Of a stretch of DNA of 64,000 nucleotides, positions 39,765 to 53,442 are shown one piece after another (position 1 is the first letter of the stretch; each line of letters opens with the position of its first letter). The position numbers and the translations under genes were made by a program. Location of the stretch: positions 124,001-188,000 of the IMG/VR virus record IMGVR_UViG_3300043425_001539. The stretch is one strand, 5' to 3'. Under the pieces are notes generated by a model, which saw only the letters and a program-made list of their open reading frames with translations, was not told where the DNA came from and did no database searches.

Positions 39765-40242
39765 ATTTATATTCCGATCTTAGCATTGACATTATACAAG
39801 AATCAATGTAAACATTATTTTTTAGTACTTCTTGTCTTTTTGTTCCTTCATTAAAAAAACCTAACTTATGATATAAATTAATTGCTCGTTTATTGGTTAC
39901 AAGAACTTCAAGAGAAACTTTGTTTAAATTATAGTCGCCAAAAAGAATTGGCAAAAATTTTTTATACGCTTGGTATCCATAACCTTTTCCTTGAAATTTT
40001 GGATGAATATCTGCGCCTACATATATATTTTTGCTTTCTTGTGAATGATTGCTTAATCTAAAATATCCTATTCTTTCTTCGTTTAACCATATAATCCAAT
40101 AGTCTGGTTTAAATGTATTAAACCAGACCAAAGATTCGTCAACAGTAAAAGTCCTTGAATCGTGTAAATATTCTTGAGCGACAAGATTTCTTGTTTCATT
40201 AAGAAACGGTACATCTTCCACTGTTATTTTTTTTATAATCAT
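39757..40242 (-). CDS. GNAT N-acetyltransferase (PseH/RimJ-like)
   Basis: FQGKGYG and LEVLVTNKRAINLYHKLGF; adjacent to a sugar aminotransferase. Confidence 0.85.
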   Translation of the reverse strand: MIIKKITVEDVPFLNETRNLVAQEYLHDSRTFTVDESLVWFNTFKPDYWIIWLNEERIGYFRLSNHSQESKNIYVGADIHPKFQGKGYGYQAYKKFLPILFGDYNLNKVSLEVLVTNKRAINLYHKLGFFNEGTKRQEVLKNNVYIDSCIMSMLRSEYKYD

Positions 40243-40248
40243 TTTAAT

Positions 40249-41430: not shown

Positions 41431-41454
41431 TAATATTTAATTTATTTATTTATC

Positions 41455-42456
41455 TTATGAATAAAAAGAGTCATATTGAATTTGGTTAAAACTTATTTTT
41501 GAATAAAGTTCAGTCAAATCCATTTCTGAATTATTCCATTTTATTTTTATTGTATTAATTTTACTTGATTGTATCGGAATTTCGCAAACATCCCACGAAA
41601 TAGGATTAATGATATATTCTTCATTATTAACAATTATGCAAATTTCTTTAATTTCTGTTTTTAAATCATAAAAAACCATTCTAAGATTTCCTGATTGAAT
41701 TACATCATATGAATCATTTTCTTGATTCCAAACGGTTTCTTCGGGGTTTTTACTAATAAAAAATTTAAAGTCTTTATGAATTTTATAATCAAAAAAATCG
41801 TACCCTGTCCAATAGTGAATTAAATCTTTAACCACAAGATCACCAGATTTTATGTTAAATTTTTTAATCCATCGTTCAACATGTGTTTCTGCAATACCGT
41901 TTGTTTTTATATAAAGATCATAGTCAATTTCATTAACAATATTTTTTAAGATTTCGCGGTTTAAAACCATAAAATGTAAACATGAATACCAAATTAGCGT
42001 CGGGTCATGCGGATCAACTCTAGGATAAACTACATTAATATCCGATGATTCAAATTTATTTAATACCTCGTCAGTTATCTCTAAATCATATATCAAGTGA
42101 AAAAAGATATCATAATCAAACGTTAATGCAATTTCACTGATTTTTTTAGTTTGATATAAAGCAGCCCAGCCGTAATCACCAACTCCTCTATGAAATGTTA
42201 TTTTTTTACCTGTATTGGTAAAAAAAGAATACCAATGAGTATATTGCCTTATTGGATAATTTAAAACTGGATTTTCTTTGGTGTAAAAGAAAAAAGAAAA
42301 CTCTTTGATTACCTCATCAGGCATAATTAAATGATTAGGACCTATTCCTATTACATCAATGCCAAGAGATTTTATTTTTTTTATGTTGTTTAATAAAATA
42401 TCAAGTTTTTCTTGAGTATCACAATAAGTGCTAATCATAGCAATTTTTTTACTCAT
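41455..42456 (-). CDS. Glycosyltransferase-like hypothetical protein
   Basis: Similar to the 38811 protein; glycan-cluster context. Confidence 0.5.
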   Translation of the reverse strand: MSKKIAMISTYCDTQEKLDILLNNIKKIKSLGIDVIGIGPNHLIMPDEVIKEFSFFFYTKENPVLNYPIRQYTHWYSFFTNTGKKITFHRGVGDYGWAALYQTKKISEIALTFDYDIFFHLIYDLEITDEVLNKFESSDINVVYPRVDPHDPTLIWYSCLHFMVLNREILKNIVNEIDYDLYIKTNGIAETHVERWIKKFNIKSGDLVVKDLIHYWTGYDFFDYKIHKDFKFFISKNPEETVWNQENDSYDVIQSGNLRMVFYDLKTEIKEICIIVNNEEYIINPISWDVCEIPIQSSKINTIKIKWNNSEMDLTELYSKISFNQIQYDSFYS

Positions 42457-42461
42457 ATTAA

Positions 42462-43016
42462 TTATTTCTGTTTATGTAAATTAATAAATTCATCAATATT
42501 ATCTGACCACAATTGCATTGCATTAATTTTTATTTTGTTTTCGTCCCAGTCCCACCAAGATATGTTTAATAAATCTTGAATCTGAGATTCGGTAAATCTA
42601 TATTTTACTATTCTTGCTGGATTTCCTGCAACAATTGCATACGGAGGCACATCTTTTGTCACAACAGAACCAGCTGCAACTATTGCTCCGTTGTGAATTG
42701 TTATTCCTGACATTATGGTTGCTTTTGCGCCTATCCAAACATCATTTTCAATTATAATGTCGCCTTTAGCTGAAGGATGTCCCATTTGCATGTGCATATT
42801 GGCAATTTCTTCGGTAACAGGACCCCATAATTGCGAACTTGTGGTAACCCAATCAGGTCTGTGATTTGCATGTAAGAAAAAGTTACAATCTCTGCCTATA
42901 GAATTATACTTACCTGCTATAATTCGATATGAATTGCTCCAAGATATAATATTAATGTTGCGATCAAAATAAGTGCCTCTGTCAGCAGAAAGTAAATGAA
43001 TATTTTCTATGCTCAT
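42462..43016 (-). CDS. CatB/Vat-like hexapeptide O-acetyltransferase
   Basis: KGDIIIENDVWIG...GSVVTKDVPPYAIVAGNPAR...WWDW. Confidence 0.9.
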   Translation of the reverse strand: MSIENIHLLSADRGTYFDRNINIISWSNSYRIIAGKYNSIGRDCNFFLHANHRPDWVTTSSQLWGPVTEEIANMHMQMGHPSAKGDIIIENDVWIGAKATIMSGITIHNGAIVAAGSVVTKDVPPYAIVAGNPARIVKYRFTESQIQDLLNISWWDWDENKIKINAMQLWSDNIDEFINLHKQK

Positions 43017-43065
43017 AAATGTTTTGATTAAATTTTTATATTCAAATATAAATAATTAGTTTTAA

Positions 43066-43839
43066 CTATATTAATGCGTACTTGTCTATTGTATTAATTT
43101 TTTCAATTAAAAATTGGCCCAAATATTTCTCAAATTCTTTAAATTCTGATGTGTTTCTAAAAATAACCCATTCATCGGCCCATTCTGTGATTCCCCAATT
43201 TATTTTTCCAATAGGTTCTCGATTCAAAGAAATGTGTATTCCATGAACAGGTCTGTATTCATTTTCATAATCAAAATAAGAAAATCTTTTTTTAACTAAT
43301 TCATATAAAAAAACTTCGTCGTGATTATGTAATCTCTTTTCAATTAAATCGGCGTAAGGAGGTAATGGATAGTAATTATCCCACAAGGAAAAATGAAGCC
43401 CTGTTAATCTGCGATACTGCTGGTTTTCATCAGCAACTTTTCTAACAATATTGCTGTATGGAAGACCTGTTTTTTCCATATCTTTGACGTGAAGAGATAA
43501 CAAATCTTTTTGCAAACAAATTATGTCAATATCGGAAATGTAAATATATTTAGATTTAACCGTTGGTTCAATTATAAATCTTGATAAATTTGGAACACAA
43601 GTTATTTTGTTCTTTTTATGAATAATTACGCCAACTTCAATCTTATTGATTAAAAACCTATTTGGAAATATTTTTGAAATGTAAGATATAGCCTTTTGTG
43701 TCTCTTCACTTAATTCATCATCATAACCTATTTCAATAAATGCAGTTGGATTATGATACAAATGTGAAAAAACAAACAAAGGAATAAAATTATTGTAAGA
43801 CTTATTACAACATGTATAAATATTTAAGGTTTCTTTCAT
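43066..43839 (-). CDS. GT-A-like hypothetical protein
   Basis: YIYISDIDI DXD motif; RLTGLHF and RPVHGIH. Confidence 0.55.
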   Translation of the reverse strand: MKETLNIYTCCNKSYNNFIPLFVFSHLYHNPTAFIEIGYDDELSEETQKAISYISKIFPNRFLINKIEVGVIIHKKNKITCVPNLSRFIIEPTVKSKYIYISDIDIICLQKDLLSLHVKDMEKTGLPYSNIVRKVADENQQYRRLTGLHFSLWDNYYPLPPYADLIEKRLHNHDEVFLYELVKKRFSYFDYENEYRPVHGIHISLNREPIGKINWGITEWADEWVIFRNTSEFKEFEKYLGQFLIEKINTIDKYALI

Positions 43840-44387
43840 TAGATTAAGTGTTCTATAAATTTTTTATTGCCTCCTCTATACCAGTGATATAGATATAAAC
43901 CTCTTATTAAATAAAATTTTAATTGGTGCTTTTGTAATTTCCAATGCAAATCATTATCCACGCCAAGCATACCTTCAGCTTTAAATCCGCCGATTGTTTT
44001 CCAGGTGCTTTTTTTAATTAAAATTAAAAAGCCACTCATAACAGCATTTTTTGGCTTATTTGTTACATCAATAACCGATGAATCATAAATAACTTTCATT
44101 TTTTCACCAAAATCTCTATGATATTTTATGTTATCATTAAAAATATCAACACCAGGCGCAATTTGCCATTCGCATCCTACTCTGTTTGTAAATCCCGTAA
44201 AACAAGAAGCGTCGGGATTTTCCATTAAAGCTTTTTCTATGATTAATCCATAATCAGGTGTTGTGAAAATTGTATCACCGTCAACTATACAAGCCCAATC
44301 ATCATCATTCGGCAAAATTTCCATGAAAGAATTATAATACTGGCCTATATTTTTATTTGCATCAAAAGGGATTGTATAATATATCAT
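43839..44387 (-). CDS. GT2-like glycosyltransferase
   Basis: WACIVDGD, SGFLILIKKSTW..IGGF and GVDND motifs. Confidence 0.7.
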   Translation of the reverse strand: MIYYTIPFDANKNIGQYYNSFMEILPNDDDWACIVDGDTIFTTPDYGLIIEKALMENPDASCFTGFTNRVGCEWQIAPGVDIFNDNIKYHRDFGEKMKVIYDSSVIDVTNKPKNAVMSGFLILIKKSTWKTIGGFKAEGMLGVDNDLHWKLQKHQLKFYLIRGLYLYHWYRGGNKKFIEHLI

Positions 44388-45445
44388 ATTGGTTTTCCGT
44401 TTATAAAGTTTTGCAACTGTCCGTAATCTTTTCTAATTTTTACTTTTTTTGCAATGCTTGAATTGTGTGTCCAAAGCCAAAAGTAATCTGAGCAAATAAT
44501 ATTAGAGTTTAATGGTTTAATATTAATTGGGTACTTCCATAATACATAGTTAAAAGATATCTGATCTCTTTTGGAATATTTTAAAACTTGTTCCCACCAC
44601 ATATTACATAAAAATCGAACTTCTTTAACGTTTTTTCGATAAATAATACCTGTTTGGACCATTCCCCAATTTTCAGGATATCCTTCATTCTTATATATTT
44701 CTGTTTGTTTAATTAAGATTTTTTCATCATCTTTTTTAAATTTAATACAAGCATCTCTTTCCTGGTAAACACAAATTCTGTCAGGGTGCGCAGAAACTGC
44801 AAAAATGTCTTGAGGAGTCAAAAATTTTTGCATAAATTGTTGCGGAGAATTAATAATTTCTACAGTACCATCAATCCATATAGAAGTTTCATATTCAGGT
44901 AAAAATAAATGAGGTAAAATTTTTAACGCTCTTGCTCTTTTTGTTTGATCCAAAAAATTTAAAATTTTAGGTATTTCTCTTATTTCCCATTTTTTATATC
45001 TGCCTGGTCTAATAAGATTGGTAAAACAAATATAATCCCAAGAATCGTCATAATTGCCTATATCTTTAAGATTATCATAATCACCCGAAATACATGTGTA
45101 TATTACTTTTTTATTTTTGGTTTCAATAAATTCATTTGCTTCTATATTTTGATAAAAAAATTCGATTGATTCATTGGCTTTTTCAGGTCTATGTACAGTA
45201 ATTGCTTCTACAGAAAATTCGTCAATTTTATATTGTAGTCCTGTTTTTCTACCTTGCTTAAGCCAATGTCTTAAAGCTAAAAATTCATTATTAATGTTTT
45301 TAGCTTTTAATTGCGAATTAATAAAAATATAATCTTGCCAGTCAAAATCTTCGGGTACATGCGGATGATTTCTTAATCGTTCAAGTTGCTTTGTTGTCGC
45401 GTCTTCGCGTAGCCTCTCAAATTTTTCATTTCTTGGGTCCTTCAC
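44384..45445 (-). CDS. DUF616 (TOD1/MUCI70-like) glycosyltransferase with N-terminal FDW..Y repeat
   Basis: IYTCISGDYD, KILPHLFLP..SIWIDG, HPDRICVYQE and RDQISFNY; GTG start. Confidence 0.75.
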   Translation of the reverse strand: MKDPRNEKFERLREDATTKQLERLRNHPHVPEDFDWQDYIFINSQLKAKNINNEFLALRHWLKQGRKTGLQYKIDEFSVEAITVHRPEKANESIEFFYQNIEANEFIETKNKKVIYTCISGDYDNLKDIGNYDDSWDYICFTNLIRPGRYKKWEIREIPKILNFLDQTKRARALKILPHLFLPEYETSIWIDGTVEIINSPQQFMQKFLTPQDIFAVSAHPDRICVYQERDACIKFKKDDEKILIKQTEIYKNEGYPENWGMVQTGIIYRKNVKEVRFLCNMWWEQVLKYSKRDQISFNYVLWKYPINIKPLNSNIICSDYFWLWTHNSSIAKKVKIRKDYGQLQNFINGKPI

Positions 45446-45473
45446 TTTATGCGTTTTTTATAGCATATATATC

Positions 45474-45505
45474 AAAAAAGGAAAGGTACACTTAAGTACC
45501 TTTCC
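45474..45505 (-). terminator. Intrinsic terminator ending the Ro60 transcript
   Basis: ggaaaggtac-acttaa-gtacctttcc hairpin followed by a U-tract on the minus strand. Confidence 0.8.
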
Positions 45506-45528
45506 TATATTAATTAAAAAAACAACAA

Positions 45529-47154
45529 CTATTTATTTTCAATTTCATCCCACGCTTTTATAATTGCGTCAGCATATTGTGCCTCTTTACCTGTCCATCC
45601 TGTTAAAATTGCTCCGCGATATAATGTTTCAGGCAAAACAGAATTTGTATATCCGCCCACCTGAACAGAAAACACATTTACCTTTGGATTTACAGTTTTA
45701 CGATATTGTCGAATAACAGCAAGAACGTCGAGATATGATGAATAATTTGAAGATCTGTAAGTAAACTCTTTAGGTAATTCATCATGCCCAAACAATTCGC
45801 CTCGGCCAGCCTGCATATCTGAATAAATAAAAACTGTGTCATAATGAATTTTTTCGTTTAGTGCAGCATTCCAAAATAACCAAAGACCATTTTCGGTGTT
45901 AGATCCTGTTCTTTTACCTTTCTCTGTAATGTCTGTAAGTTGACTTAATATTCCGTTTCTTTTGGAAATAGGTGTCATTGTTAATCTGTCGCCAAAAACT
46001 CCAACCTCTCCATTGTCAGCTTGTTTTGCAGTTATAACTGAAGACAAATTAGCAATATCAGCAATAGTAATTTTCCCATATTCCGAATTAAATGTGCCCC
46101 AGGCAGAACCAGAATTGTCTGATAAGCATGCAACCTTGCCTTTTAATTTAGGCATATTTGCAACTGAAATATCAATACACTCTTCAAGAGCATCAAGAAT
46201 TTGCTGCTTATAAGGAATGTCAGTGCTTTTAATAATGTTAAAAGCAGTATAATACCTAAATGGGAATTGCTTTCCTTGTAAAACTCCTGCTTTTAATTGC
46301 TCAAGAATTTGTGTTGCTTGATCTTGTGATAATTCAGATTTTGAAAAAATTCCGCGCAAATTCCTCAACAAGGCCATATGAGGAACTTTAATTGTATTCA
46401 AAATTTCCACCCATGTCTTGCCACTTGATTTTAACATTTCCCAAGTTTGCTCAGTTTCTTTTATCGCAACGGTACCTGTACGCATCAATTCATTGATAGT
46501 TTCATTGTTTGCGTGAGATAACCTTACCAAGTCAATTAGCCTTTTTCCTTTATACTTATTAATTTGATATCTAGACATTGATTCTAAAGAATCAGCCCAA
46601 GACCTCTTAAGAATTGAAGGTAAACCTTTTTTAGACCCGTTTAAATACATATAATATTCAAATTGGTTAGTTATGTCGTCAGGACGCGGTGTAATTTCTT
46701 TAGCAAAAGCGCGCATATAACCTGGATTTTTGGCATTAAATTCCACCCGATTTTTGTGACGAATTGCTCTAACATAAATAACCGCGGGATTCAAGCGCAT
46801 TAAGTATTCATTACGTAATTCCTTGGCAAACTCCAAGGTTCCTAAATAATCATAATCCAATGCGTTGTCAATTACTCGCTCAAACACTTGCCCAGCATCT
46901 TCATTTGGGGATATCAAGTCAGCAAAAATAAAATCCGCAGATAATTTCGAAGGATATTCAACCTTGATACCTTTTCTATAGTACTGCGGTTCGCCAAAAA
47001 TTGAGCTCGTTGCAACCATTTTGAGTGTTTGCAAAGGGTTAACTTTAAATGAAGTACCGCCCATAAAGTTTTGTTCAGCTTGCGCTTCATACATAGAGAT
47101 TTCTGCTTTTCTTTGAACGACTTCCTTGGATGCTGATGAGCTTAATCTTGACAT
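45529..47154 (-). CDS. rsr: Ro60 / TROVE domain RNA-binding protein with vWA domain
   Basis: FGEPQYY, LRNEYLMRLNP, YQINKY, MALLRNLR and KQFPFRYYTA; MIDAS DNSGSA and IYSDMQ. Confidence 0.9.
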   Translation of the reverse strand: MSRLSSSASKEVVQRKAEISMYEAQAEQNFMGGTSFKVNPLQTLKMVATSSIFGEPQYYRKGIKVEYPSKLSADFIFADLISPNEDAGQVFERVIDNALDYDYLGTLEFAKELRNEYLMRLNPAVIYVRAIRHKNRVEFNAKNPGYMRAFAKEITPRPDDITNQFEYYMYLNGSKKGLPSILKRSWADSLESMSRYQINKYKGKRLIDLVRLSHANNETINELMRTGTVAIKETEQTWEMLKSSGKTWVEILNTIKVPHMALLRNLRGIFSKSELSQDQATQILEQLKAGVLQGKQFPFRYYTAFNIIKSTDIPYKQQILDALEECIDISVANMPKLKGKVACLSDNSGSAWGTFNSEYGKITIADIANLSSVITAKQADNGEVGVFGDRLTMTPISKRNGILSQLTDITEKGKRTGSNTENGLWLFWNAALNEKIHYDTVFIYSDMQAGRGELFGHDELPKEFTYRSSNYSSYLDVLAVIRQYRKTVNPKVNVFSVQVGGYTNSVLPETLYRGAILTGWTGKEAQYADAIIKAWDEIENK

Positions 47155-47180
47155 AATAAAAATTGGTTTAATAAGTTAAA

Positions 47181-47262
47181 AAATCGAGAATATCAAAAAG
47201 AGTTTTTAATAAAGTATCATTTACAAATTGATTTTGAAGTAACTCTTTTTCCGCTTCGATTT
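47181..47262 (-). ncRNA. Y RNA-like element 1
   Basis: AAAUCGA-AGCGG-AAAAAGAGUU-ACUUCAA...AACUCUUUUU-GAUAUUC-UCGAUUU. Terminal stem plus inner stem; ends 26 nt upstream of the Ro60 ATG. Confidence 0.7.
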
Positions 47263-47263
47263 G

Positions 47264-47336
47264 AGCAACAAGCGAGACTCGAACTCGCAACATTTAGTTT
47301 GGAAAACTAACACTCTACCAATTGAGCTATTGTTGC
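47264..47336 (-). tRNA. tRNA-Gly(TCC)
   Basis: Cloverleaf: GCAACAA/TTGTTGC acceptor, TTAGT-TTTCCAA-ACTAA anticodon arm, TTCGAGT T-loop; no encoded CCA. Confidence 0.9.
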
Positions 47337-47341
47337 TTATT

Positions 47342-47426
47342 TTTTCTTGAGAAAATTATTAAAGGTGTTGGTGTGTGAAAATTCTAAAACAATTTTGAAG
47401 TAACCTTTAATACCGCTTCAAGAAAA
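47342..47426 (-). ncRNA. Y RNA-like element 2
   Basis: UUUUCUUGA-AGCGG-UAUUAAAGGU-UACUUCAA...ACCUUUAAUA-AUUUUC-UCAAGAAAA. Same architecture as element 1 with compensatory stem changes. Confidence 0.7.
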
Positions 47427-47431
47427 TATTT

Positions 47432-47482
47432 TTTTTAAAGAACGTTTGTAGATATAATATACAAGTAATGATAAATAGTTTT
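47432..47482 (-). promoter_or_regulatory. Promoter and leader duplicated upstream of both RNA transcription units
   Basis: ttttttaaagaacgtttgtagatata...ataaatagtttt is near-identical to 50241-50292 and contains the AAAAC-N15-GTAT motif. Confidence 0.7.
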
Positions 47483-47507
47483 TGTGATTTGATATTTTTT
47501 TTTAAAT

Positions 47508-48254
47508 TTAATCAAACGGCAAAGAAACTCCTCTTTTTCCAACAACGGCACAAGATAAAAAGTTTGCAAAACTTATTGAAGCGTTCAAATCCTTTGTTTC
47601 TAAATAAGTAATACCAAAAGCCGCAACAAAAGTATCTCCTGCACCACTTACATCAATGGTTTCTTTTGGATTTTTAAGAGCGAATGTTTTGTTGTTTATC
47701 ATCGCTCCTCTTGCGCCCAGTGTAACAATAATATTACTTTTATCAGAAATATGCAAATTGTTTGACATTTCGCTTTCGTTTAACTTAATAAATGTAAATT
47801 CTTTAACAATTTCATCAGTTAAAATTTTCTTGGAATCCAACAAAGTTAATTTGCCATTTTTTGCTATTTTTAATAAATCATCATGCCCTAAAAAACCTTT
47901 GTTATAATCACTTACAATTACTAAATCCGCTTCTTTAATCTCTTTTATATTTTCTTCTGTGATGTTAATTTTTCCAACTGGTTGCAATTCTCCGTCATCA
48001 ATTCTAACAATCATTTGGTTTGACTTTTCATCAACAATCCTTGTTTTTTTAATCAATTCTTTCTGATGCCAAAATGTTATACTTGTCTCGGGATTTATTG
48101 ATTTAATGTTTTCTACAACATTTCCTGCCATTCCAGGGTTTTGTGTAGTTTTAATTGGATTAAAAACTGGAACAGGCGCTTCAGGACACAGCCTAACAGT
48201 TTTTCCATAAATAAATTCATCAGTACAAAGTTCACCTATAACTATTACTTTCAT
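47508..48254 (-). CDS. rfaE1: Heptose-7-phosphate kinase-like PfkB protein (HldE/RfaE domain I)
   Basis: RLCPEAPVPV, GMAGNV, IVSDYNKG, VTLGARGA and DVSGAGDTF motifs. Confidence 0.85.
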   Translation of the reverse strand: MKVIVIGELCTDEFIYGKTVRLCPEAPVPVFNPIKTTQNPGMAGNVVENIKSINPETSITFWHQKELIKKTRIVDEKSNQMIVRIDDGELQPVGKINITEENIKEIKEADLVIVSDYNKGFLGHDDLLKIAKNGKLTLLDSKKILTDEIVKEFTFIKLNESEMSNNLHISDKSNIIVTLGARGAMINNKTFALKNPKETIDVSGAGDTFVAAFGITYLETKDLNASISFANFLSCAVVGKRGVSLPFD

Positions 48255-48720
48255 AATTTAAAATTTTTGTTGTTGAATATTTTTCAATTCTTGGAAAAAA
48301 AATTAGTTCTTTAGCATATTCACTTCCTATAACTCCATTTTTGCGATACTCTTCTCCTACTATTAAATAATCAGGGTTTAATCTTTTAATTGCATTTTTA
48401 AGTTCTTCTGAGTCATCAAAAACAATAATGTTTGATACATAAACTATCGAGCTTAACATCTCAATTCTATCTTTTAAAGAATTATACGGTCGCAATTCGC
48501 CTTTTAACTCTTTAATTCTACGATCTGTGTCAATTCCTACTGTTACTTCCCCGTATGAATAAGCATATTTAAGTAAACGAATATGACCGTTGTGTAACAC
48601 ATCAAAAGTACCGTTAACCCAAACCTTTTTATTTAATTTACTATAATGATTTGGCGCAGGAAGACTGGAATAAAAATCCCAGTCTTCATCATCAAGAAAT
48701 TTAGTGGTTTCTTTATTCAT
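48232..48720 (-). CDS. rfaE2: Heptose-1-phosphate adenylyltransferase-like protein (RfaE domain II / cytidylyltransferase)
   Basis: VNGTFDVLHNGH, VGIDTD..LKGELRP and YSTTKI; start reassigned to MNKETT. Confidence 0.85.
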   Translation of the reverse strand: MNKETTKFLDDEDWDFYSSLPAPNHYSKLNKKVWVNGTFDVLHNGHIRLLKYAYSYGEVTVGIDTDRRIKELKGELRPYNSLKDRIEMLSSIVYVSNIIVFDDSEELKNAIKRLNPDYLIVGEEYRKNGVIGSEYAKELIFFPRIEKYSTTKILNYESNSYR

Positions 48721-48725
48721 GTGTA

Positions 48726-49112
48726 CTACTTTTGCGAATCGCCAGCCCAAACTCGGTAACTGTCTTCATCAAAGTGTTGTGTTGATACTTCAAAAACAAT
48801 GCCATCTGTAAGAGCTTCAAGTTGATGCGGTTGTCCTGGATATTGTCGAACAGAGTCTCCTTCTCTTAATGTTATTTCATTGACTTTTGCGGTTTGCGTA
48901 TCTATCCAACGATAAATAAATTCGCCTTCTTTAACATACCAAGTTTCATCTTTAAGCATGTGATAATGCATTGAAAATTTTGCGCCTGCTTTAAAACACA
49001 AAAGTTTTCCGCAATAAAATTCATTATTTTCAAATACAATCTCATGTCCCCATCCTTTAGGAACATTGCATTCTTTGCACTCCTTTGCATTGAATATGTT
49101 TGGTTTTTTCAT
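48726..49112 (-). CDS. Cupin (mannose-6-phosphate isomerase-like)
   Basis: KGWGHE, FSMHYHMLKDETWYV, PH.L and EVST..F.EDSYR motifs. Confidence 0.8.
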   Translation of the reverse strand: MKKPNIFNAKECKECNVPKGWGHEIVFENNEFYCGKLLCFKAGAKFSMHYHMLKDETWYVKEGEFIYRWIDTQTAKVNEITLREGDSVRQYPGQPHQLEALTDGIVFEVSTQHFDEDSYRVWAGDSQK

Positions 49113-49141
49113 AAAAATATATTTGATTTATATATTCAGAG

Positions 49142-49212
49142 CAGAAGCATTAGGATTCGAACCTAAAATAACGCTTTTGGAGAGCGCCATGATACCTTTT
49201 CACCATACTCCT
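49142..49212 (-). tRNA. tRNA-Trp(CCA)
   Basis: AGGAGTA/TGCTTCT acceptor, GCGCT-CTCCAAA-AGCGT anticodon arm, TTCGAAT T-loop, G73. Confidence 0.88.
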
Positions 49213-49216
49213 GTAT

Positions 49217-49390
49217 TTATTCACAGTATTTATTTTTTCTGCACTTGTATTTATTCTCTTCTTTCTTTTTATCTTTAAATACTTTAGGGGCAAACCTTCC
49301 ATCATAGAATCCTTGTTCCTGGGCATTTTTTCTTTGTTTACCCATTTCAATTTTCCTAAGTTGTTCTGAAGTTATCACAAATTTTTTCAT
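49217..49390 (-). CDS. Small basic protein, candidate ArfA-like ribosome rescue factor (57 aa, not in ORF track)
   Basis: MKKFVITSEQLRKIEMGKQRKNAQEQGFYDGRFAPKVFKDKKKEENKYKCRKNKYCE. It exactly fills the gap between tRNA-Gln and tRNA-Trp and has an AT-rich start context. The ArfA likeness is inference. Confidence 0.55.
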   Translation of the reverse strand: MKKFVITSEQLRKIEMGKQRKNAQEQGFYDGRFAPKVFKDKKKEENKYKCRKNKYCE

Positions 49391-49412
49391 ATTAAAATTT
49401 TTAAATTGTGAG

Positions 49413-49483
49413 TTATCTGATCTGGGCTCGAACCAGAAATTTAGGACTCAAAAACCTACGTGATACCATTTCACTATCAGACA
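49413..49483 (-). tRNA. tRNA-Gln(TTG)
   Basis: TGTCTGA/TCAGATA acceptor (U1-A72), TAGGT-TTTTGAG-TCCTA anticodon arm, TTCGAGC T-loop. Confidence 0.85.
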
Positions 49484-49488
49484 ATATG

Positions 49489-49562
49489 TAGGCCTGGCAG
49501 GGTACGATCCTGCAACCCCTGAATTAAAAGTTCAGTGCTCTATCCATTTGAGCTACAAGCCT
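49489..49562 (-). tRNA. tRNA-Lys(TTT)
   Basis: AGGCTTG/CAGGCCT acceptor, CTGAA-CTTTTAA-TTCAG anticodon arm; atypical ATCGTAC T-loop. Confidence 0.88.
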
Positions 49563-49569
49563 ATATTTG

Positions 49570-49641
49570 AGCCTTCTGTCGGACTCGAACCAACATCTTC
49601 TAAATTACAAATTTAAAGCTTTACCATTAAGCTAAGAAGGC
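49570..49641 (-). tRNA. tRNA-Thr(TGT)
   Basis: GCCTTCT/AGAAGGC acceptor, TTAAA-TTTGTAA-TTTAG anticodon arm, TTCGAGT T-loop. Confidence 0.88.
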
Positions 49642-49649
49642 AATTTGTG

Positions 49650-49725
49650 TCCGAGAAGAAGGGTTCGAACCTTCATGATGTCTGGTTCCCAAAACCAGAG
49701 GCTTAGCCAATTAGCCCATTCTCGG
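49650..49725 (-). tRNA. tRNA-Pro(TGG)
   Basis: CCGAGAA/TTCTCGG acceptor, CTGGT-TTTGGGA-ACCAG anticodon arm, TTCGAAC T-loop. Confidence 0.88.
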
Positions 49726-49735
49726 AAATTTGATT

Positions 49736-49777
49736 AAAAACAAAAAGGTCCAGATAATTTAATTACCTGGACCTTTT
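49736..49777 (-). terminator. Intrinsic terminator inside the tRNA operon (attenuator terminator)
   Basis: RNA AAAAGGUCCAGGUAAU-UAA-AUUAUCUGGACCUUUU followed by UGUUUUU. Confidence 0.85.
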
Positions 49778-49799
49778 AAGAATAATAATTACTATTATA

Positions 49800-49919
49800 C
49801 TAAGGTCCAGTATCTGGCCACGTAGACGGTTGTTGAACACAACCAATAACACCAACCGGTGTAGCAACTGTTTTGCTTGTTGCTTTTGAAATTTTAGCTG
49901 ATGTGATTTGTTGTTTCAT
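49800..49919 (-). CDS. Putative attenuator leader peptide (39 aa, not in ORF track)
   Basis: MKQQITSAKISKATSKTVATPVGVIGCVQQPSTWPDTGP*. Its last codons contain CUGGACCUU, complementary to the 5' arm of the downstream terminator. Confidence 0.7.
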   Translation of the reverse strand: MKQQITSAKISKATSKTVATPVGVIGCVQQPSTWPDTGP

Positions 49920-49938
49920 ATTTTTAATTTTAATTTAG

Positions 49939-50010
49939 TGGCGGGGCCGGGAATCGAACCCGAACCTCCAGGTTATGAGCCTGGCGAACTACCGTTATTA
50001 CCACCCCGCA
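49939..50010 (-). tRNA. tRNA-Met(CAT), initiator-like
   Basis: TGCGGGG/CCCCGCC acceptor with a 1:72 mismatch, CCAGG-CTCATAA-CCTGG anticodon arm, TTCGATT T-loop; weak D-stem. Confidence 0.8.
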
Positions 50011-50019
50011 ATGTTTTAG

Positions 50020-50094
50020 AGATCATAGAAAGAATCGAACTTTCGCTTACCGGCGCGGACGCCCTTTCCGGCTTTCTACCAACAGAATATGGTC
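50020..50094 (-). ncRNA. tRNA-like RNA lacking a canonical anticodon loop
   Basis: GACCATA/TATGATC acceptor, TTCT-GTTGGT-AGAA D-arm and GAAAG-TTCGATT-CTTTC T-arm; the anticodon arm GCCGG/CCGGT closes a 14-nt loop. Confidence 0.6.
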
Positions 50095-50116
50095 AATTTT
50101 TACTATTATATATTTT

Positions 50117-50240
50117 TTCTTTTCTTGAGAATTTTAACCAAAGGCGTTAAGAAAGGGGGAAAGCAAATTTCAGTGTTAAAACCTATATTGCTTAGTAGAG
50201 CTATATTGAAGTAACCATCGGTACCGCTTCAAGAAAAGAA
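50117..50240 (-). ncRNA. Y RNA-like element 3 (larger variable domain)
   Basis: UUCUUUUCUUGA-AGCGG-UACCGAUGGU-UACUUCAA...GCCUUUGGU-UAAAAUUC-UCAAGAAAAGAA. Confidence 0.7.
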
Positions 50241-50292
50241 TTTTTTAAAGAACGTTTGTAGATATAATATACACAAGATAATAAATAGTTTT
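50241..50292 (-). promoter_or_regulatory. Promoter and leader of the Y3-tRNA-attenuator unit
   Basis: Duplicate of 47432-47482. Confidence 0.7.
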
Positions 50293-50309
50293 CAGAAAAT
50301 AAAAAATAT

Positions 50310-50525
50310 TTATTTATTTTTTGTGCTTTCTGCTATGATATAAAAAATGTATTTAATCATAACAAAAATATACGGCATGCAAGCTGCAATTCCCAATTTT
50401 AGATGCCATATTTGGTACCCAAACATATAAGAAAAACCGGCCAAAACTCCTAAAAAGAGTGGGAGAAATATTACATAAATAATAAAATATGCCTCCCACT
50501 GTAATCTATCAAAGAATAATTTCAT
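50310..50525 (-). CDS. Small membrane protein
   Basis: Two predicted transmembrane segments. Confidence 0.55.
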   Translation of the reverse strand: MKLFFDRLQWEAYFIIYVIFLPLFLGVLAGFSYMFGYQIWHLKLGIAACMPYIFVMIKYIFYIIAESTKNK

Positions 50526-50542
50526 ATATTTTTATATTTTTA

Positions 50543-51091
50543 TTACCACAATCCATCAGAACTTTTAATATCCTTGACTTTAGACAAATCCCAATCAAAA
50601 TCTGAATGAACTTTAGATTTACTAAATATGCCTTTCATATATCTGACATTTCTAATATCCCAATTTCTTAGATTACCATCAAAAGGAGTATCATAAAACA
50701 TAGATGCCATGTTGGTTACTTTACTAACATTCCACCCGCTAACGTCACCCTTAAAAGGTGTCCCTTCAAACATACCTTCCATGTTGGTTACATTGCTAAC
50801 GTCCCATTCGCTAATGTCACCTTTAAAATCTGACCCATAAAACATGTAGGACATATTTTTTACATTACTAACATTCCATTCGCTAATGTTGCCATTAAAA
50901 GGCATTTCTGCAAATAAGAATGACATGTCTTTAATTCGCGAAACATCAACATGACTTAAATCTGCATTAGGCCCAAATTTAGCTATTTCATTTTCAATTA
51001 TCGACTCTAAAGATTTCCGATCTATTGCATAAATAACTTTGTTTTGAGCAGCTTCGTTAAGAAACTGATCGAAAGATTTTAAATTTTTCAT
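50543..51091 (-). CDS. BspA-type / DUF285 leucine-rich repeat protein with N-terminal tag
   Basis: 24-aa repeats FNGxISxWNVSNVxNMxxMF; N-terminus MKNLKSFDQFLNEA. Confidence 0.85.
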   Translation of the reverse strand: MKNLKSFDQFLNEAAQNKVIYAIDRKSLESIIENEIAKFGPNADLSHVDVSRIKDMSFLFAEMPFNGNISEWNVSNVKNMSYMFYGSDFKGDISEWDVSNVTNMEGMFEGTPFKGDVSGWNVSKVTNMASMFYDTPFDGNLRNWDIRNVRYMKGIFSKSKVHSDFDWDLSKVKDIKSSDGLW

Positions 51092-51095
51092 TTTT

Positions 51096-51872
51096 TTAAA
51101 TTTTTATATGTTTCAGACCATACATTCTATCTACATTATCAGCCTTTGATAAATTCCATTGACTAATATCGCCTTTAAACTTAGAGTCTAAGAACATTAT
51201 AAATACATCTCTGACATTGCTAACGTCCCATTTGCTAATGTCGCCGTTAAATCGAGATTCTGCAAACATGTGCGTCATATCTCTAACTTTGCTAACATTC
51301 CACTTGCTGATGTCACCGTTAAAAGTTGTCTTTTGAAACATGTGCGACATATCAATAACTTTGCTGACATCCCACTTGCTGATGTCGCCATTAAATTTAG
51401 ACCCTTCAAACAATGATGACATCATTTCAACATTACTTACATCCCATTGACTAATGTCGCCGTTAAATTTAGAATATGCAAACATATCAGACATATCACG
51501 TACATTGCTTACATCCCACTTGCTAACATCGCCGTTAAACGAAGAATGACGAAACATTCCCCACACAGTGCGAGCATTACTAACATTCCACTTGCTAACA
51601 TCGCCGTTAAATTTTGAGAATGCAAATGTATCATTAAAATTAGTAACATTGCTTACATCCCACTTGCTAACGTCGCCGTTAAATTTTGTACCTGAAAAAG
51701 CGGCGCTTATATCGGTTAGACCTGAAACATCAATGTGATTTAAGTCAGCATTTGGTCCTAGCAATTGAATTTCTTTTAAAATAATTGGTTTTAATTCTTT
51801 TGCGTTCTTTGGGACAATAATTTCGCGTTCTGCTTCATTAAGAAACTGATCAAATGTTTTTAAATTTTTCAT
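51096..51872 (-). CDS. BspA-type / DUF285 LRR protein with N-terminal tag
   Basis: Tandem 24-aa FNGDVSKWDVSNV repeats; N-terminus MKNLKTFDQFLNEA. Confidence 0.85.
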   Translation of the reverse strand: MKNLKTFDQFLNEAEREIIVPKNAKELKPIILKEIQLLGPNADLNHIDVSGLTDISAAFSGTKFNGDVSKWDVSNVTNFNDTFAFSKFNGDVSKWNVSNARTVWGMFRHSSFNGDVSKWDVSNVRDMSDMFAYSKFNGDISQWDVSNVEMMSSLFEGSKFNGDISKWDVSKVIDMSHMFQKTTFNGDISKWNVSKVRDMTHMFAESRFNGDISKWDVSNVRDVFIMFLDSKFKGDISQWNLSKADNVDRMYGLKHIKI

Positions 51873-51897
51873 TTACTATGTTTTTTTTTATATATAT

Positions 51898-52737
51898 TTA
51901 GTTAAACAAATCTTCTTTAGACGTTACGTCTCGCAGATTTGTCAAATTCCACATATGAACACTTCTTTTAAATTTAGATCCTTGGAAGATACTTTCAATG
52001 TATTGCACTTGTCTTACGTCCCACTTACTAATGTCTTGATTAAATGATGAGCCATTAAACATAAAACTCATATTTTCTACATTGCTAACGTTCCATTTGC
52101 CGATGTTTTGATTAAATCGAGAGTCAGCAAACATCCATTGCATATCGGTAACATTTAATACATTCCAATTGCCGATGTCTTGATTAAATTTCGATAACCT
52201 AAACATATATGACATATCAGTTACTCGTCTTACGTTCCACTTGCTGATGTCACCGTTAAATTGTGATTCCGTAAACATTCCACGCATCAGCTCTACATTA
52301 CTCACGTTCCAACCACTGATATCTCCTTTAAATTTGGAATCTTTGAACATATTAGACATATCAATGACATTACCAACATCCCATTTGCTGATATCTTTAT
52401 TGAACTCTGATCCTTCAAACATACCTGACATATCTTTTACTTTGCCAACATTCCACTTGCTGATGTCACTATTAAAATGAGAATACAAAAACATATTTTT
52501 CATAGAAGTAACATTGCTAACATCCCACTTGCTGATATTGCCTTTAAATTGTGACCCTTCAAACAAGGATACCATGTTGGTAACTTGCGAAACGTCAATA
52601 TGATTCAGATCTGCTTTAGGTCCAAGTCTAGCAATTTCGCTTTCTACTATATCCTTTAAAGTTTGTCGATCTTTAGCAATAATAGTTTCTTGTGTAGCTT
52701 CATTAAGAAAATGTTCAAAAGTTTTTAAATTTTTCAT
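51898..52737 (-). CDS. BspA-type / DUF285 LRR protein with N-terminal tag
   Basis: Tandem 24-aa repeats; N-terminus MKNLKTFEHFLNEA. Confidence 0.85.
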   Translation of the reverse strand: MKNLKTFEHFLNEATQETIIAKDRQTLKDIVESEIARLGPKADLNHIDVSQVTNMVSLFEGSQFKGNISKWDVSNVTSMKNMFLYSHFNSDISKWNVGKVKDMSGMFEGSEFNKDISKWDVGNVIDMSNMFKDSKFKGDISGWNVSNVELMRGMFTESQFNGDISKWNVRRVTDMSYMFRLSKFNQDIGNWNVLNVTDMQWMFADSRFNQNIGKWNVSNVENMSFMFNGSSFNQDISKWDVRQVQYIESIFQGSKFKRSVHMWNLTNLRDVTSKEDLFN

Positions 52738-52770
52738 TTACTATGTTTTTATTAATTTTAATATTGCACA

Positions 52771-53442
52771 TTATTTTTTTGCATATGAAGAGATTTTCCA
52801 ATTTGAAGTATCCCCCTTGAAAGCTGAGTTATTAAACATGTCGGTCATATCCTCAACCTTACTAACATTCCACTTGCTGATATCTTGATTAAATTCTGAA
52901 GATTGAAACATTCCAGCCATATCATAAACATTACCTACATTCCATTTGCTGATGTCTTTGTTAAATCTTGAGTCTTGAAACATCCAAGACATATCAGTAA
53001 CATTACTAACATTCCACTTGCTGATATCTTGATTAAATTCTGAATAAGCAAACATACCAGTCATAACTTTTACGTTGCTTACATTCCACCTGCTGATATC
53101 TTGATTAAATTCTGATGATGCAAACATATAGGCCATTAATCGAACATTCCGAACATTCCATCCTGAAATGTTACCATTAAAGACTGACTCCTGAAACATA
53201 TAGGACATGTTTTCAACTTGACTAACATCCCATTTACTTATGTTGCCGTTAAAATCTGAATTTTTAAACAACCCCGACATATCTTTAACTTTTGATACAT
53301 CAATATGATTTAAATCCGCCGTAGAACCTTGTGTTTTGATTGCATCTTCAATTAGCTTTATTAAATCTGCTTTATCTTTAGCAATAATTGTTGTGCCTGC
53401 TGCTTCATTAAGAAACTGCTCAAAGGTTTTAAAATTTTTCAT
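52771..53442 (-). CDS. BspA-type / DUF285 LRR protein with N-terminal tag
   Basis: Tandem 24-aa repeats; N-terminus MKNFKTFEQFLNEA. Confidence 0.85.
   Translation of the reverse strand: MKNFKTFEQFLNEAAGTTIIAKDKADLIKLIEDAIKTQGSTADLNHIDVSKVKDMSGLFKNSDFNGNISKWDVSQVENMSYMFQESVFNGNISGWNVRNVRLMAYMFASSEFNQDISRWNVSNVKVMTGMFAYSEFNQDISKWNVSNVTDMSWMFQDSRFNKDISKWNVGNVYDMAGMFQSSEFNQDISKWNVSKVEDMTDMFNNSAFKGDTSNWKISSYAKK

What the first reader, a model, noticed from the sequence alone, without database searches (positions are those of the whole stretch)
47181..47482. tRNA punctuation: promoter - Y2 - tRNA-Gly - Y1 - Ro60
Seen: tRNA-Gly starts 5 nt after the Y2 stem and ends 1 nt before the Y1 stem, and Y1 ends 26 nt before the Ro60 ATG. 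Inference: host RNase P and 3' tRNA processing would release both Y-like RNAs. Y1 could remain as the Ro60 5' UTR and give autoregulation. In all three copies GAAG can alternatively pair with the conserved CUUC, so a conformational switch is possible.
Basis: partly seen in the sequence, partly recalled or inferred. Interest (0 to 1): 0.6.

Follow-up and report, generated by a model that had tools for sequence, protein, structure and literature searches.

The report
Phage Y RNAs flanking a tRNA
A freshwater jumbo phage encodes, in one apparent operon, two short Y-RNA-like hairpins on either side of a real glycine tRNA, directly ahead of its Ro60 gene; the hairpins belong to a large, well-conserved family of Ro60-linked RNAs that is absent from Rfam, so this is a new arrangement of a known kind of system.

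Summary
The order is: promoter-like site, Y2 (47426-47342), a 5-nt gap, tRNA-Gly(UCC) (47336-47264), a 1-nt gap, Y1 (47262-47181), a 26-nt gap, and the Ro60 ATG (47154). A third copy, Y3 (50240-50117), has a near-identical promoter and heads a tRNA operon.

Y1-Y3 belong to a conserved RNA family with this layout:
- closing stem
- 5' loop AGCGG
- variable 8-9 bp helix
- UUACUUC
- variable insert
- 3' loop ending in UC

The evidence for the family:
- A covariance model finds only these three copies in the 238 kb phage.
- It finds 113/113 and 52/52 hits on the Ro60 strand beside Ro60 homologues in phage and cellular contigs.
- All 17 base pairs covary.
- In Bacillus phage G and another phage, the same module closes a YrlA-type tRNA-like domain.

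The Y-like label is therefore supported: these are short, YrlB-like forms. Release by RNase P and RNase Z is a sound inference, and tight Y-tRNA abutment recurs in three other phage loci. Autoregulation by Y1 as a leader is not supported by relatives, which place a terminator before Ro60. The GAAG:CUUC switch shows no covariation and costs 5-9 kcal/mol. Nothing has been tested experimentally.

The parts
47456..47485 (-). Promoter-like site of the Y2 unit: -10 TATATT at 47461-47456 and a weak -35 ACAAAA at 47485-47480
   Evidence: The flank aligns with the Y3 flank and with the flanks of the first element in relatives. In L005 the homologous site scores TTGAAA-18-TATATT, 10/12. For Y3 it scores 9/12. 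The start site has not been mapped.
47435..47445 (-). Conserved 11-nt block ACGTTCTTTAA at about +2 of the predicted transcript; role unknown
   Evidence: Identical upstream of Y2, of Y3 and of the first element of relatives whose Ro60 is only about 60% identical.
47342..47426 (-). Y2, a short Y-RNA-like hairpin: stem 1; AGCGG at 47417-47413; helix 2 at 47412-47404 with 47365-47357; UUACUUC at 47403-47397; 3' loop AUUUUC
   Evidence: Model R1 gives 70 bits, E 1.5e-13. MFE fold is -14.9 kcal/mol, z -2.5.
47264..47336 (-). tRNA-Gly(UCC), 73 nt, discriminator U, no encoded CCA
   Evidence: ARAGORN and Rfam tRNA at 71.8 bits. It is the only Gly tRNA among the 12 tRNAs of the 238 kb record.
47181..47262 (-). 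Y1, a short Y-RNA-like hairpin: stem 1 AAAUCGA with UCGAUUU; AGCGG at 47255-47251; helix 2 at 47250-47243 with 47202-47195; UUACUUC at 47242-47236; followed by a U-run
   Evidence: Model R1 gives 62.8 bits, E 7e-12. Fold.
47155..47180 (-). 26-nt A/U-rich spacer between Y1 and the Ro60 start; no terminator and no room for a promoter
   Evidence: Sequence. The terminator scan finds nothing here. Relatives carry a terminator at this position.
45529..47154 (-). Ro60 (TROVE plus vWA-type DxSxS motif), 541 aa
   Evidence: Pfam TROVE E 1.6e-8. 48.7% identity to Bacillus phage G gp540. Best solved relative is Thermus phage phiLo Ro60, 9KOP/9L5Y, E 1.2e-11. D346-N-S-G-S350 is invariant in 8 homologues.
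45479..45506 (-). Terminator-like hairpin (11 bp) plus U-run that would close the unit after Ro60
50117..50240 (-). Y3, a longer paralogue with a pyrimidine-rich insert; it heads a unit containing tRNA-Met
   Evidence: Model R1 gives 48 bits, E 2e-8. Fold is -25 kcal/mol, z -2.1.
50245..50295 (-). Promoter-like site (CTGAAA-18-TATATT) and the conserved ACGTTCTTTAA block of the Y3 unit

Best explanation
Y1, Y2 and Y3 are phage-encoded Y RNAs of the short kind. They carry a Ro60-binding module only, like YrlB, and have no tRNA-like domain. The family accompanies one clade of Ro60 genes in phages and prophage-like regions.

In this phage, one sigma-70-like promoter most likely gives a single transcript: a 24-nt leader, Y2, tRNA-Gly, Y1 and the Ro60 mRNA, ending at the terminator at 45479-45506. 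Host RNase P would cut at tRNA position 1 and free Y2 with a 5-nt tail. Because the tRNA has no encoded CCA, RNase Z would cut after the discriminator. That leaves Y1 with a single extra 5' base, still joined to the Ro60 message until a further cut or partial termination at its U-run.

The released hairpins would bind the phage Ro60 through the invariant internal loop (AGCGG opposite ...AUUC) and the adjoining UUACUUC. By analogy with Deinococcus and Thermus phage phiLo, they would couple or gate Ro60 towards a host exoribonuclease.

Shown here: the anatomy, the family, its covariation and its linkage to Ro60. Inferred: co-transcription, the cleavage sites, Ro60 binding and the downstream function.
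For: Family and structure:
- 64 distinct members give 84% paired cells against 58.8 +/- 1.1 in shuffles.
- All 17 pairs show compensatory changes (0/500 shuffles reach this).
- The covariation score is 0.71, against 0.10-0.28 for slid registers.
- The nine highest mutual-information column pairs are all predicted pairs.
- Cognate helix-2 strands give 7.7 contiguous pairs, against 4.7 for non-cognate strands.

Linkage to Ro60:
- Only three copies exist in the 238 kb genome.
- 113/113 hits in 80 phage Ro60 loci and 52/52 in 80 cellular-assembly loci lie on the Ro60 strand, mostly within 1 kb upstream.
- Of 10 loci that were found by DNA pattern alone and then confirmed by the model, 7 hold an adjacent Ro60 homologue and 1 is this phage's own Y3.

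Link to known Y RNAs:
- The same module closes a permuted T-arm / acceptor / D-arm domain that matches Rfam YrlA at 36 bits, E 1.5e-6, in phage G (L132:1783-1938).
- It does the same at 43 bits, E 3e-8, in L078.
- The YGAAG and UUAC blocks correspond to the GNCGAAN0-1G and YUAY motifs of Chen et al. 2014 (PMC4201824).
- The nearest solved protein is phiLo Ro60. It binds two upstream Yrl RNAs through a CGAA stem-bulge (PMC12135203).
- M. smegmatis YrlA and YrlB come from one precursor upstream of rsr, and YrlA is an RNase P substrate.

Operon:
- The gaps are 5, 1 and 26 nt, there is no terminator before Ro60, and there is one after it.
- None of the 7 tRNAs in the window has an encoded CCA.
- Y-tRNA abutment at 3-9 nt recurs in L034/L103, L154 and L151.
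Against: - There are no RNA data for the small RNAs. The single metatranscriptome run holds only two low-depth contigs inside the Ro60 ORF, and these could be DNA.
- Y1-Y3 match neither Rfam YrlA nor Y_RNA at E<=10.
- Y2 and Y3 have UGAA rather than the published CGAA.
- The tRNA between Y elements is seen only in this phage, and the closest relatives lack it. The punctuation is therefore not needed for the family to work.
- I did not test the frequency of Y-tRNA abutment against a null model of compact RNA-gene islands.
- The record is 84% complete, so a YrlA-type RNA elsewhere cannot be excluded.
- The host is unknown, so the presence of RNase Z is assumed.
Confidence: 0.7

Rival explanations
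1. Y1, and possibly the whole family, is a cis-acting leader. Ro60 binds its own mRNA leader and represses or stabilises it, which would be autoregulation.
For: In this phage Y1 sits 26 nt before the ATG with no terminator between them. After the tRNA is excised, Y1 would be the 5' end of the Ro60 message. In L012 the last upstream element ends 11 nt before the ATG and abuts a GGAGG.
Against: In the relatives checked, nearly all have a terminator-like hairpin plus U-run between the last Y element my script found and Ro60. Elements also lie downstream of Ro60 (L015, L012, L198), 3 kb away (Y3) or inside tRNA arrays (L151, L034). Copies come in arrays of 2-5. Y1 does not overlap the start region, and the start region is not sequestered in the fold.
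Confidence: 0.12
2. The elements are processing or leader signals of tRNA operons, for example entry sites or protective 5' hairpins, and their nearness to Ro60 is secondary.
For: Y3 heads a tRNA unit, Y2 precedes tRNA-Gly, and elements abut tRNA-Val (L034, L154) and lie between tRNA-Asp and tRNA-Met (L151).
Against: Only about 4 of 115 elements in the Ro60 loci touch a tRNA. The other tRNAs of this genome (Phe, Ser, Lys, Leu, Arg) have no such element. Strand and distance track Ro60, not tRNAs.
Confidence: 0.06
3. The uncut or half-cut Y2-tRNA-Y1 RNA is itself the working molecule. A real tRNA would take the place of the tRNA-like domain of YrlA, with a Ro60-binding module on each side.
For: No YrlA-type RNA was found in this record, although Chen et al. 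report at least one per species. phiLo Ro60 forms 2:2 complexes with Yrl2. YrlA-type members of the same family nest a tRNA-like domain inside the module.
Against: Each of Y1 and Y2 closes on itself. The tRNA scores as a normal tRNA (71.8 bits) and is the phage's only Gly tRNA, so it is expected to be matured. The record is incomplete.
Confidence: 0.08
4. The hairpins are repeats or chance A/U-rich hairpins with no RNA function.
For: Single-sequence folding is only modestly better than shuffles (z -1.3 to -2.5).
Against: Covariation at all 17 pairs, invariant loop bases across Ro60 genes of 22-62% identity, strict strand bias and no other copies in the genome.
Confidence: 0.02

Closest known systems
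YrlB-type bacterial Y RNAs (Salmonella and M. smegmatis YrlB; Chen et al. 2014, PMC4201824)
   Same: Short Ro60-associated RNA encoded beside rsr on the same strand. The 5' and 3' ends pair. There is a purine-rich CGAA-like block on the 5' strand of a stem-loop-stem. It is made from a common precursor with other Y RNAs upstream of rsr.
   Different: The sequence family is not detectable by Rfam. The extra invariant blocks AGCGG and UUACUUC are not described in the text I could read. The copies flank a real tRNA. Binding has not been tested.
YrlA (Rfam RF02553)
   Same: The Ro60-binding module of Y1-Y3 is the one that closes YrlA-type RNAs in phage G, L078, L012 and L151. YUAY follows the stem.
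   Different: Y1-Y3 have no tRNA-like T/acceptor/D domain and no RF02553 hit. Here a separate, genuine tRNA lies between two modules instead of a mimic inside one.
Thermus phage phiLo Ro60 with Yrl1 and Yrl2 (PMC12135203)
   Same: A phage Ro60, the closest solved homologue, with two Y-like RNAs directly upstream of the gene. They share the stem-bulge-stem shape with a CGAA-type motif that is needed for binding.
   Different: No tRNA between the Yrl genes is mentioned in the passages I read.
tRNA punctuation of polycistronic transcripts (mitochondrial punctuation model; spacer tRNAs in bacterial rRNA operons) - from general knowledge
   Same: A tRNA abutting other functional RNAs, so that RNase P and RNase Z cuts define their ends.
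   Different: Here the released products would be Y RNAs and an mRNA for their protein partner. I found no report of this in the paper library.

Membership tests
Bacterial/phage Y RNA (Ro60-associated ncRNA, Chen et al. 2014 criteria) | Encoded within 4 kb of the Ro60 orthologue on the same strand | tested here: met
   Y1 ends 26 nt, Y2 about 190 nt and Y3 about 3 kb upstream of the Ro60 ATG, all on the minus strand. The family-wide strand bias is 113/113 and 52/52.
Bacterial/phage Y RNA (Ro60-associated ncRNA, Chen et al. 2014 criteria) | 5' and 3' ends pair into a stem interrupted by a loop or bulge that carries the motif GNCGAAN0-1G (CGAA) on the 5' strand | tested here: inconclusive
   The stem-loop-stem is confirmed by covariation. 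Y1 has AUCGAAG, with CGAAG present but without the G two bases upstream. Y2 and Y3 have CUUGAAG, that is UGAA. In 64 members the base before GA is C in 28 and U in 34.
Bacterial/phage Y RNA (Ro60-associated ncRNA, Chen et al. 2014 criteria) | Conserved YUAY following the stem | tested here: met
   UUAC is present in all three copies. U24, A25 and C26 are invariant or nearly so in 64 members. The motif is described.
Bacterial/phage Y RNA (Ro60-associated ncRNA, Chen et al. 2014 criteria) | Physically bound by Ro60 | not testable with these tools
   Needs EMSA or immunoprecipitation.
YrlA (Rfam RF02553) | Internal tRNA-like domain (T arm, acceptor-like stem, D arm) and a score above the gathering threshold | tested here: not met
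   No RF02553 hit on Y1-Y3 at E<=10. Own-genome hits are weak: one is a tandem-tRNA artefact (22.1 bits at the Thr/Lys pair), one a 15.8-bit hit over tRNA-Gly and Y1, and the other two also lie at tRNA genes. Other family members do match the core.
Eukaryote-type Y RNA (Rfam Y_RNA) | Match to the covariance model | tested here: not met
   No hit at E<=10 in 44000-51000.
tRNA-punctuated transcript | A genuine tRNA abuts the other RNAs with no room for separate promoters or terminators | tested here: met
   Gaps are 5 nt and 1 nt. The tRNA scores 71.8 bits. There is no terminator-like site between 47426 and 47155 other than the tRNA's own T arm.
tRNA-punctuated transcript | RNA ends coincide with RNase P and RNase Z cleavage sites | not testable with these tools
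   Only assembled contigs of one RNA run were available, and they lie inside the ORF.
Ro60 / TROVE protein | TROVE (HEAT-repeat ring) domain plus a vWA domain with a DxSxS MIDAS motif | tested here: met
   Pfam TROVE E 1.6e-8. phiLo Ro60 E 1.2e-11. D346-N-S-G-S350 is invariant. The fold was not modelled.
Autoregulatory mRNA leader | The protein's RNA site overlaps or occludes the ribosome-binding region, and the arrangement is conserved | tested here: not met
   Y1 ends 26 nt before the AUG, and the start region is open in the fold. Relatives place a terminator between the elements and Ro60.

The most novel reading that the evidence does not exclude
In this phage a genuine tRNA has taken the place of the tRNA-like domain of YrlA. 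On this reading the Y2-tRNA-Gly-Y1 precursor, or a half-processed form, is loaded with Ro60 on both sides of the tRNA. It would serve as a working particle that couples Ro60 to tRNA maturation or surveillance during infection. Y1 would then tie Ro60 synthesis to that process.
Probability: 0.08. Interest if true: 0.8.

Novelty: new variant of a known kind. Interest (0 to 1): 0.5.

Why it matters
Y RNAs are the obligatory partners of Ro60, but few bacterial or phage examples have been defined, and Rfam models only the tRNA-like core of YrlA.

This locus led to a family of well over 150 hits. It has a sharply defined, covarying Ro60-module (AGCGG / UUACUUC / ...UC), and it occurs in arrays of 2-5 copies next to one Ro60 clade in jumbo phages, Bacillus phage G and many cellular assemblies. 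That gives:
- a ready covariance model for annotating phage Y RNAs;
- invariant bases to mutate in binding studies;
- natural series of short forms, long forms and forms containing a tRNA-like domain.

A true tRNA wedged between two Y RNAs, with Ro60 next in line, is a compact natural test case. It can show how Y RNAs are matured and whether their long-noted kinship with tRNAs reflects shared processing.

Tried and rejected
- **Rfam.** No family above gathering except tRNAs. No YrlA or Y_RNA hit on Y1-Y3 even at E<=10.
- **Megablast of the locus against GenBank phages.** No match.
- **Collection-wide DNA pattern scan.** Of the first 100 loci scanned with the model, 90 were chance hits, and 10 were confirmed by the model.
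- **GAAG:CUUC alternative pairing.**
  - In the hand-curated set, 23/34 members can pair and none of the 11 variants is compensatory.
  - In the 64-member alignment there are 2 compensatory cases among 26 variants.
  - The alternative fold is 5-9 kcal/mol worse.
  - I reject it as a conserved feature.
- **Long-range pairing of the conserved leader with the start of the Ro60 ORF**, suggested by the MFE fold. It is no better than shuffled leaders and is not conserved in position. Rejected.
- **The leader as a competitor for helix 2.** It fits Y2 and the long elements of relatives but not Y3, so I dropped it.
- **RNA evidence.** One metatranscriptome run holds only two small contigs inside the Ro60 ORF, at depth about 2. 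This says nothing about ends or small RNAs.
- **RtcB and CCA-adding enzyme genes.** Absent from the phage record.
- **Desulfovibrio phage Ro60 locus (35% identity).** No family member within 3 kb.
- **The tRNA-shaped stretch after Y3.** No relatives in any fetched locus.
- **Two reviews on bacterial Y RNAs.** Not held in the library. The supplements of Chen et al. 2014 were not held either, so I could not check which phage G RNA they reported.
- **Not used.** The large protein searches, structure prediction and complex prediction were not needed. No genetic code other than table 11 was used.

Full report
**Where the window comes from.** The window is bases 124001-188000 of a 238 kb IMG/VR virus record that CheckV rates 84% complete. 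It is A/T-rich, and nearly all its genes lie on the minus strand. DNA runs that hold it are mostly freshwater metagenomes. The closest Ro60 relatives in cellular assemblies are Bacteroidia, Saprospiraceae, Chitinophagales and a Flavobacterium isolate, at 51-54% identity. A Bacteroidota host is therefore plausible but not shown.

**The observation.** Read on the minus strand, the order is as follows.
- A promoter-like site, with -10 TATATT at 47461-47456.
- A conserved block ACGTTCTTTAA at 47445-47435.
- Hairpin Y2 at 47426-47342.
- Five bases.
- tRNA-Gly(UCC) at 47336-47264 (ARAGORN and Rfam, 71.8 bits).
- One base.
- Hairpin Y1 at 47262-47181.
- Twenty-six bases.
- The ATG of a 541-aa ORF at 47154-45529.

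The ORF is a Ro60. It has Pfam TROVE at E 1.6e-8 and 48.7% identity over its full length to Bacillus phage G gp540. Its nearest solved relative is Thermus phage phiLo Ro60 at E 1.2e-11. It carries an invariant DxSxS motif.

A third copy, Y3 (50240-50117), lies 3 kb upstream. Its flank is almost identical over about 45 nt to that of Y2. It is followed by an odd tRNA-shaped stretch, then tRNA-Met, a small ORF and a strong terminator.

**The hairpins are a real RNA family.** All three copies share one plan.
- A closing stem that usually ends in YGA paired with UCR.
- A 5' loop AGCGG.
- A second helix of 8-9 bp whose sequence differs in every copy.
- The block UUACUUC.
- A variable insert.
- The return strand of helix 2.
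- A 3' loop ending in UUC.
- The return strand of the closing stem.

The short pattern occurs three times in the window and three times in the genome, and never in shuffles.

Related Ro60 genes in IMG/VR (49-62% identity) carry the same elements just upstream. Typically there are three in a row: one long and two short. Bacillus phage G has five in the unannotated 1 kb gap before gp540 and two more nearby.

I built a covariance model (R1) from 22 short members.
- In the phage's own 238 kb it finds only Y1, Y2 and Y3. The next hit has E=0.09.
- In 80 phage Ro60 loci it finds 113 hits, all on the Ro60 strand.
- In 80 Ro60 loci from cellular assemblies it finds 52 hits, all on the Ro60 strand.
- In a search that did not use Ro60 at all, I scanned the first 100 loci found by DNA pattern. 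Ten had true model hits. Seven of these turned out to have an adjacent Ro60 homologue of 22-61% identity. One is this phage's own Y3. Two lie in tRNA arrays on short contigs.

On 64 distinct members:
- 84% of cells pair, against 58.8% in shuffles.
- All 17 pairs show double changes.
- The covariation score is 0.71, against 0.10-0.28 for slid registers.
- The nine best mutual-information column pairs are all predicted pairs.
- G10, C11, G13, U24, C26, U28, C29 and the last C of the 3' loop are invariant, and A25 is nearly so at 63/64.

This alignment was fitted to the model, which favours the structure. An independent test of cognate against non-cognate strands points the same way, at 7.7 versus 4.7 contiguous pairs.

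**Why Y RNA is the right name.**
- The linkage to Ro60 meets the criterion that Chen et al. 2014 used: within 4 kb and on the same strand.
- In phage G (L132:1783-1938) and in a GC-rich phage with a distant Ro60 (L078), the same module closes a T-arm / acceptor-like stem / D-arm domain. This domain matches the core of Rfam YrlA at E 1.5e-6 and 3e-8. L012 and L151 show the same build by eye. Rfam's model matches only that core, not the flanks. This explains why members that have the module alone are invisible to it.
- The blocks YGAAG and UUAC correspond to the GNCGAAN0-1G and YUAY motifs described for YrlA and YrlB.
- phiLo Ro60, the nearest solved homologue, binds two Yrl RNAs encoded directly upstream of its gene through a CGAA stem-bulge.

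Y1-Y3 lack the tRNA-like domain, so they are not YrlA. They are best called short, YrlB-like Y RNAs. Binding to Ro60 is inferred, not shown.

**The tRNA between them.** tRNA-Gly(UCC) looks normal and is the only Gly tRNA among the 12 tRNAs of the record. The closest relatives have no tRNA among their Y elements, so the arrangement is specific to this phage. It is not required for the family.

Tight abutment does recur elsewhere.
- An element ends 3 nt before tRNA-Val in L034/L103.
- An element ends 7 nt before tRNA-Val in L154.
- A YrlA-type member sits 5 nt after tRNA-Asp and 9 nt before tRNA-Met in L151.

These spacings equal those between tRNAs in the window's own array. I did not test whether abutment is more frequent than compact RNA islands would give by chance.

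The mechanistic inference does not depend on that test. Gaps of 5 and 1 nt cannot hold a promoter or a terminator, and Y2 is not followed by a U-run. The tRNA is therefore co-transcribed with its neighbours. None of the window's seven tRNAs has an encoded CCA. From established enzymology, CCA-less precursors are cut by RNase Z right after the discriminator, and RNase P cuts at position 1. The expected products are Y2 with its leader and a 5-nt tail, the tRNA, and Y1 joined to the Ro60 message. M. smegmatis offers precedent: there YrlA and YrlB come from one precursor upstream of rsr, and YrlA is an RNase P substrate.

**Y1 as a Ro60 leader.** In this phage there is no terminator between Y1 and Ro60, and there is one just after Ro60 at 45506-45479. 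Ro60 must therefore be read from the Y2 promoter or from further upstream, and Y1 would start the processed message.

My script examined 35 relatives. Nearly all have a terminator-like hairpin with a U-run between the last Y element it found and Ro60, often ending about 30 nt before the ATG. In some loci that interval is long and holds further elements or genes. Other loci put the elements after Ro60. The family as a whole therefore behaves as free-standing small RNAs made in excess over the Ro60 message.

Y1 does not cover the start region. Autoregulation remains possible here, but it has no comparative support. The U-run after Y1 may give partial termination; this is my inference only.

**The proposed switch.**
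- Across 64 members, the one informative pair (column 9 with column 27) gives 38 A:U, 13 A:A, 7 U:U, 3 C:U, 1 C:A and only 2 U:A. That is what independent variation predicts.
- Forcing the pairing raises the energy from -12.7 to -5.0 kcal/mol for Y1, from -15.1 to -5.9 for Y2 and from -24.3 to -19.5 for Y3.
- The invariance of these bases is better explained by protein contact.

**Promoter and leader.** The Y2 and Y3 flanks, and the flanks of the first element in relatives, align as a -35 (TTGAAA in relatives), 18 nt, a -10 TATATT, and then ACGTTCTTTAA about 9-10 nt downstream of the -10. The block is conserved between phages whose Ro60 proteins are only about 60% identical, and its role is unexplained. 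A pairing with the Ro60 ORF seen in one fold is no better than chance.

**Comparison with the literature and verdict.** Phage Ro60 genes with nearby Y-like RNAs are known: 22 phages in Chen et al. 2014, and phiLo in 2025. I found no report of a real tRNA flanked by Y RNAs, and none of this module family as such. The library is incomplete, and two key reviews and the 2014 supplements were not available.

I rate the finding a new variant of a known kind.
- The Y-like label and the processing idea are supported to the extent that sequence analysis can support them.
- The autoregulation and switch ideas are not supported.

Noticed in passing
window 50019-50094 (minus strand): A 76-nt tRNA-shaped stretch lies between Y3 and tRNA-Met. 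It has an acceptor stem with one mismatch, a D arm and a good T arm. ARAGORN calls it only with introns allowed, as tRNA-Arg(ccg) with a 7-nt insert in the anticodon stem. Rfam tRNA does not match it, and no copy exists in other loci.
   Followed up: partly
window 47435-47445 and 50245-50255 (minus strand); L005:5523, L006:815, L007:5515, L008:5234, L013:5517: An 11-nt block ACGTTCTTTAA is conserved at about +2 of the predicted transcripts that start with a Y element, across phages with only about 60% Ro60 identity. It resembles the 5' strand of the closing stem. Its role is unknown.
   Followed up: partly
L005:5544-5756, L006:836-1052, L007:5536-5762, L008:5254-5479, L013:5537-5759: In relatives the first element of each array is 210-227 nt long. 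It has a structured insert of about 190 nt containing several conserved hairpins, and the insert has no Rfam match.
   Followed up: no
L015:7834-7965: A tRNA-shaped gene has an acceptor stem, a D arm and a T arm. Where the anticodon arm should be, it carries an insert of about 70 nt that includes AUAGCGG. It lies just after two Y elements downstream of Ro60.
   Followed up: no
L154:4065-4150: A hybrid element: the 5' half of a Y module (GACGCGG ... UUACUUC) runs into what looks like the 3' half of a tRNA (T arm and acceptor 3' strand). It lies 17 nt after tRNA-Glu.
   Followed up: no
L132 (Bacillus phage G NC_023719) 3259-3938 and 1783-1938, 9364-9430: The 1 kb unannotated gap before gp540 holds five tandem Y elements. 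A YrlA-type element with its own terminator lies between gp538 and gp539. A seventh element follows tRNA-Gly(UCC) by about 140 nt. None of them is annotated in the record.
   Followed up: partly
window 37324-49112: Ro60 and its RNAs sit inside a block of nucleotide-sugar genes: FkbM methyltransferase, DegT aminotransferase, GNAT, hexapeptide transferase, a TOD1/MUCI70-like glycosyltransferase, a cupin, a cytidylyltransferase and a PfkB kinase. Relatives instead have a thioredoxin-like gene end upstream.
   Followed up: no
window 50543-53442: Four adjacent paralogues have strong DUF285 (leucine-rich-repeat-like) matches, with E-values from 1e-49 to 1e-108.
   Followed up: no
window 49260-49389 and 49797-49919 (minus strand): Two small ORFs of about 40 aa are wedged between tRNA genes. 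The second is followed by a 16-bp terminator hairpin at 49777-49743.
   Followed up: no
L223-L302 (cellular assemblies): This Ro60 clade with its Y elements also occurs in many MAGs of Clostridia, Bacilli, Synergistaceae and Bacteroidota. It is also present in the isolate genomes Flavobacterium sp. 9AF and Bacillus sp. Brlt_9. I did not check whether these are prophages.
   Followed up: no
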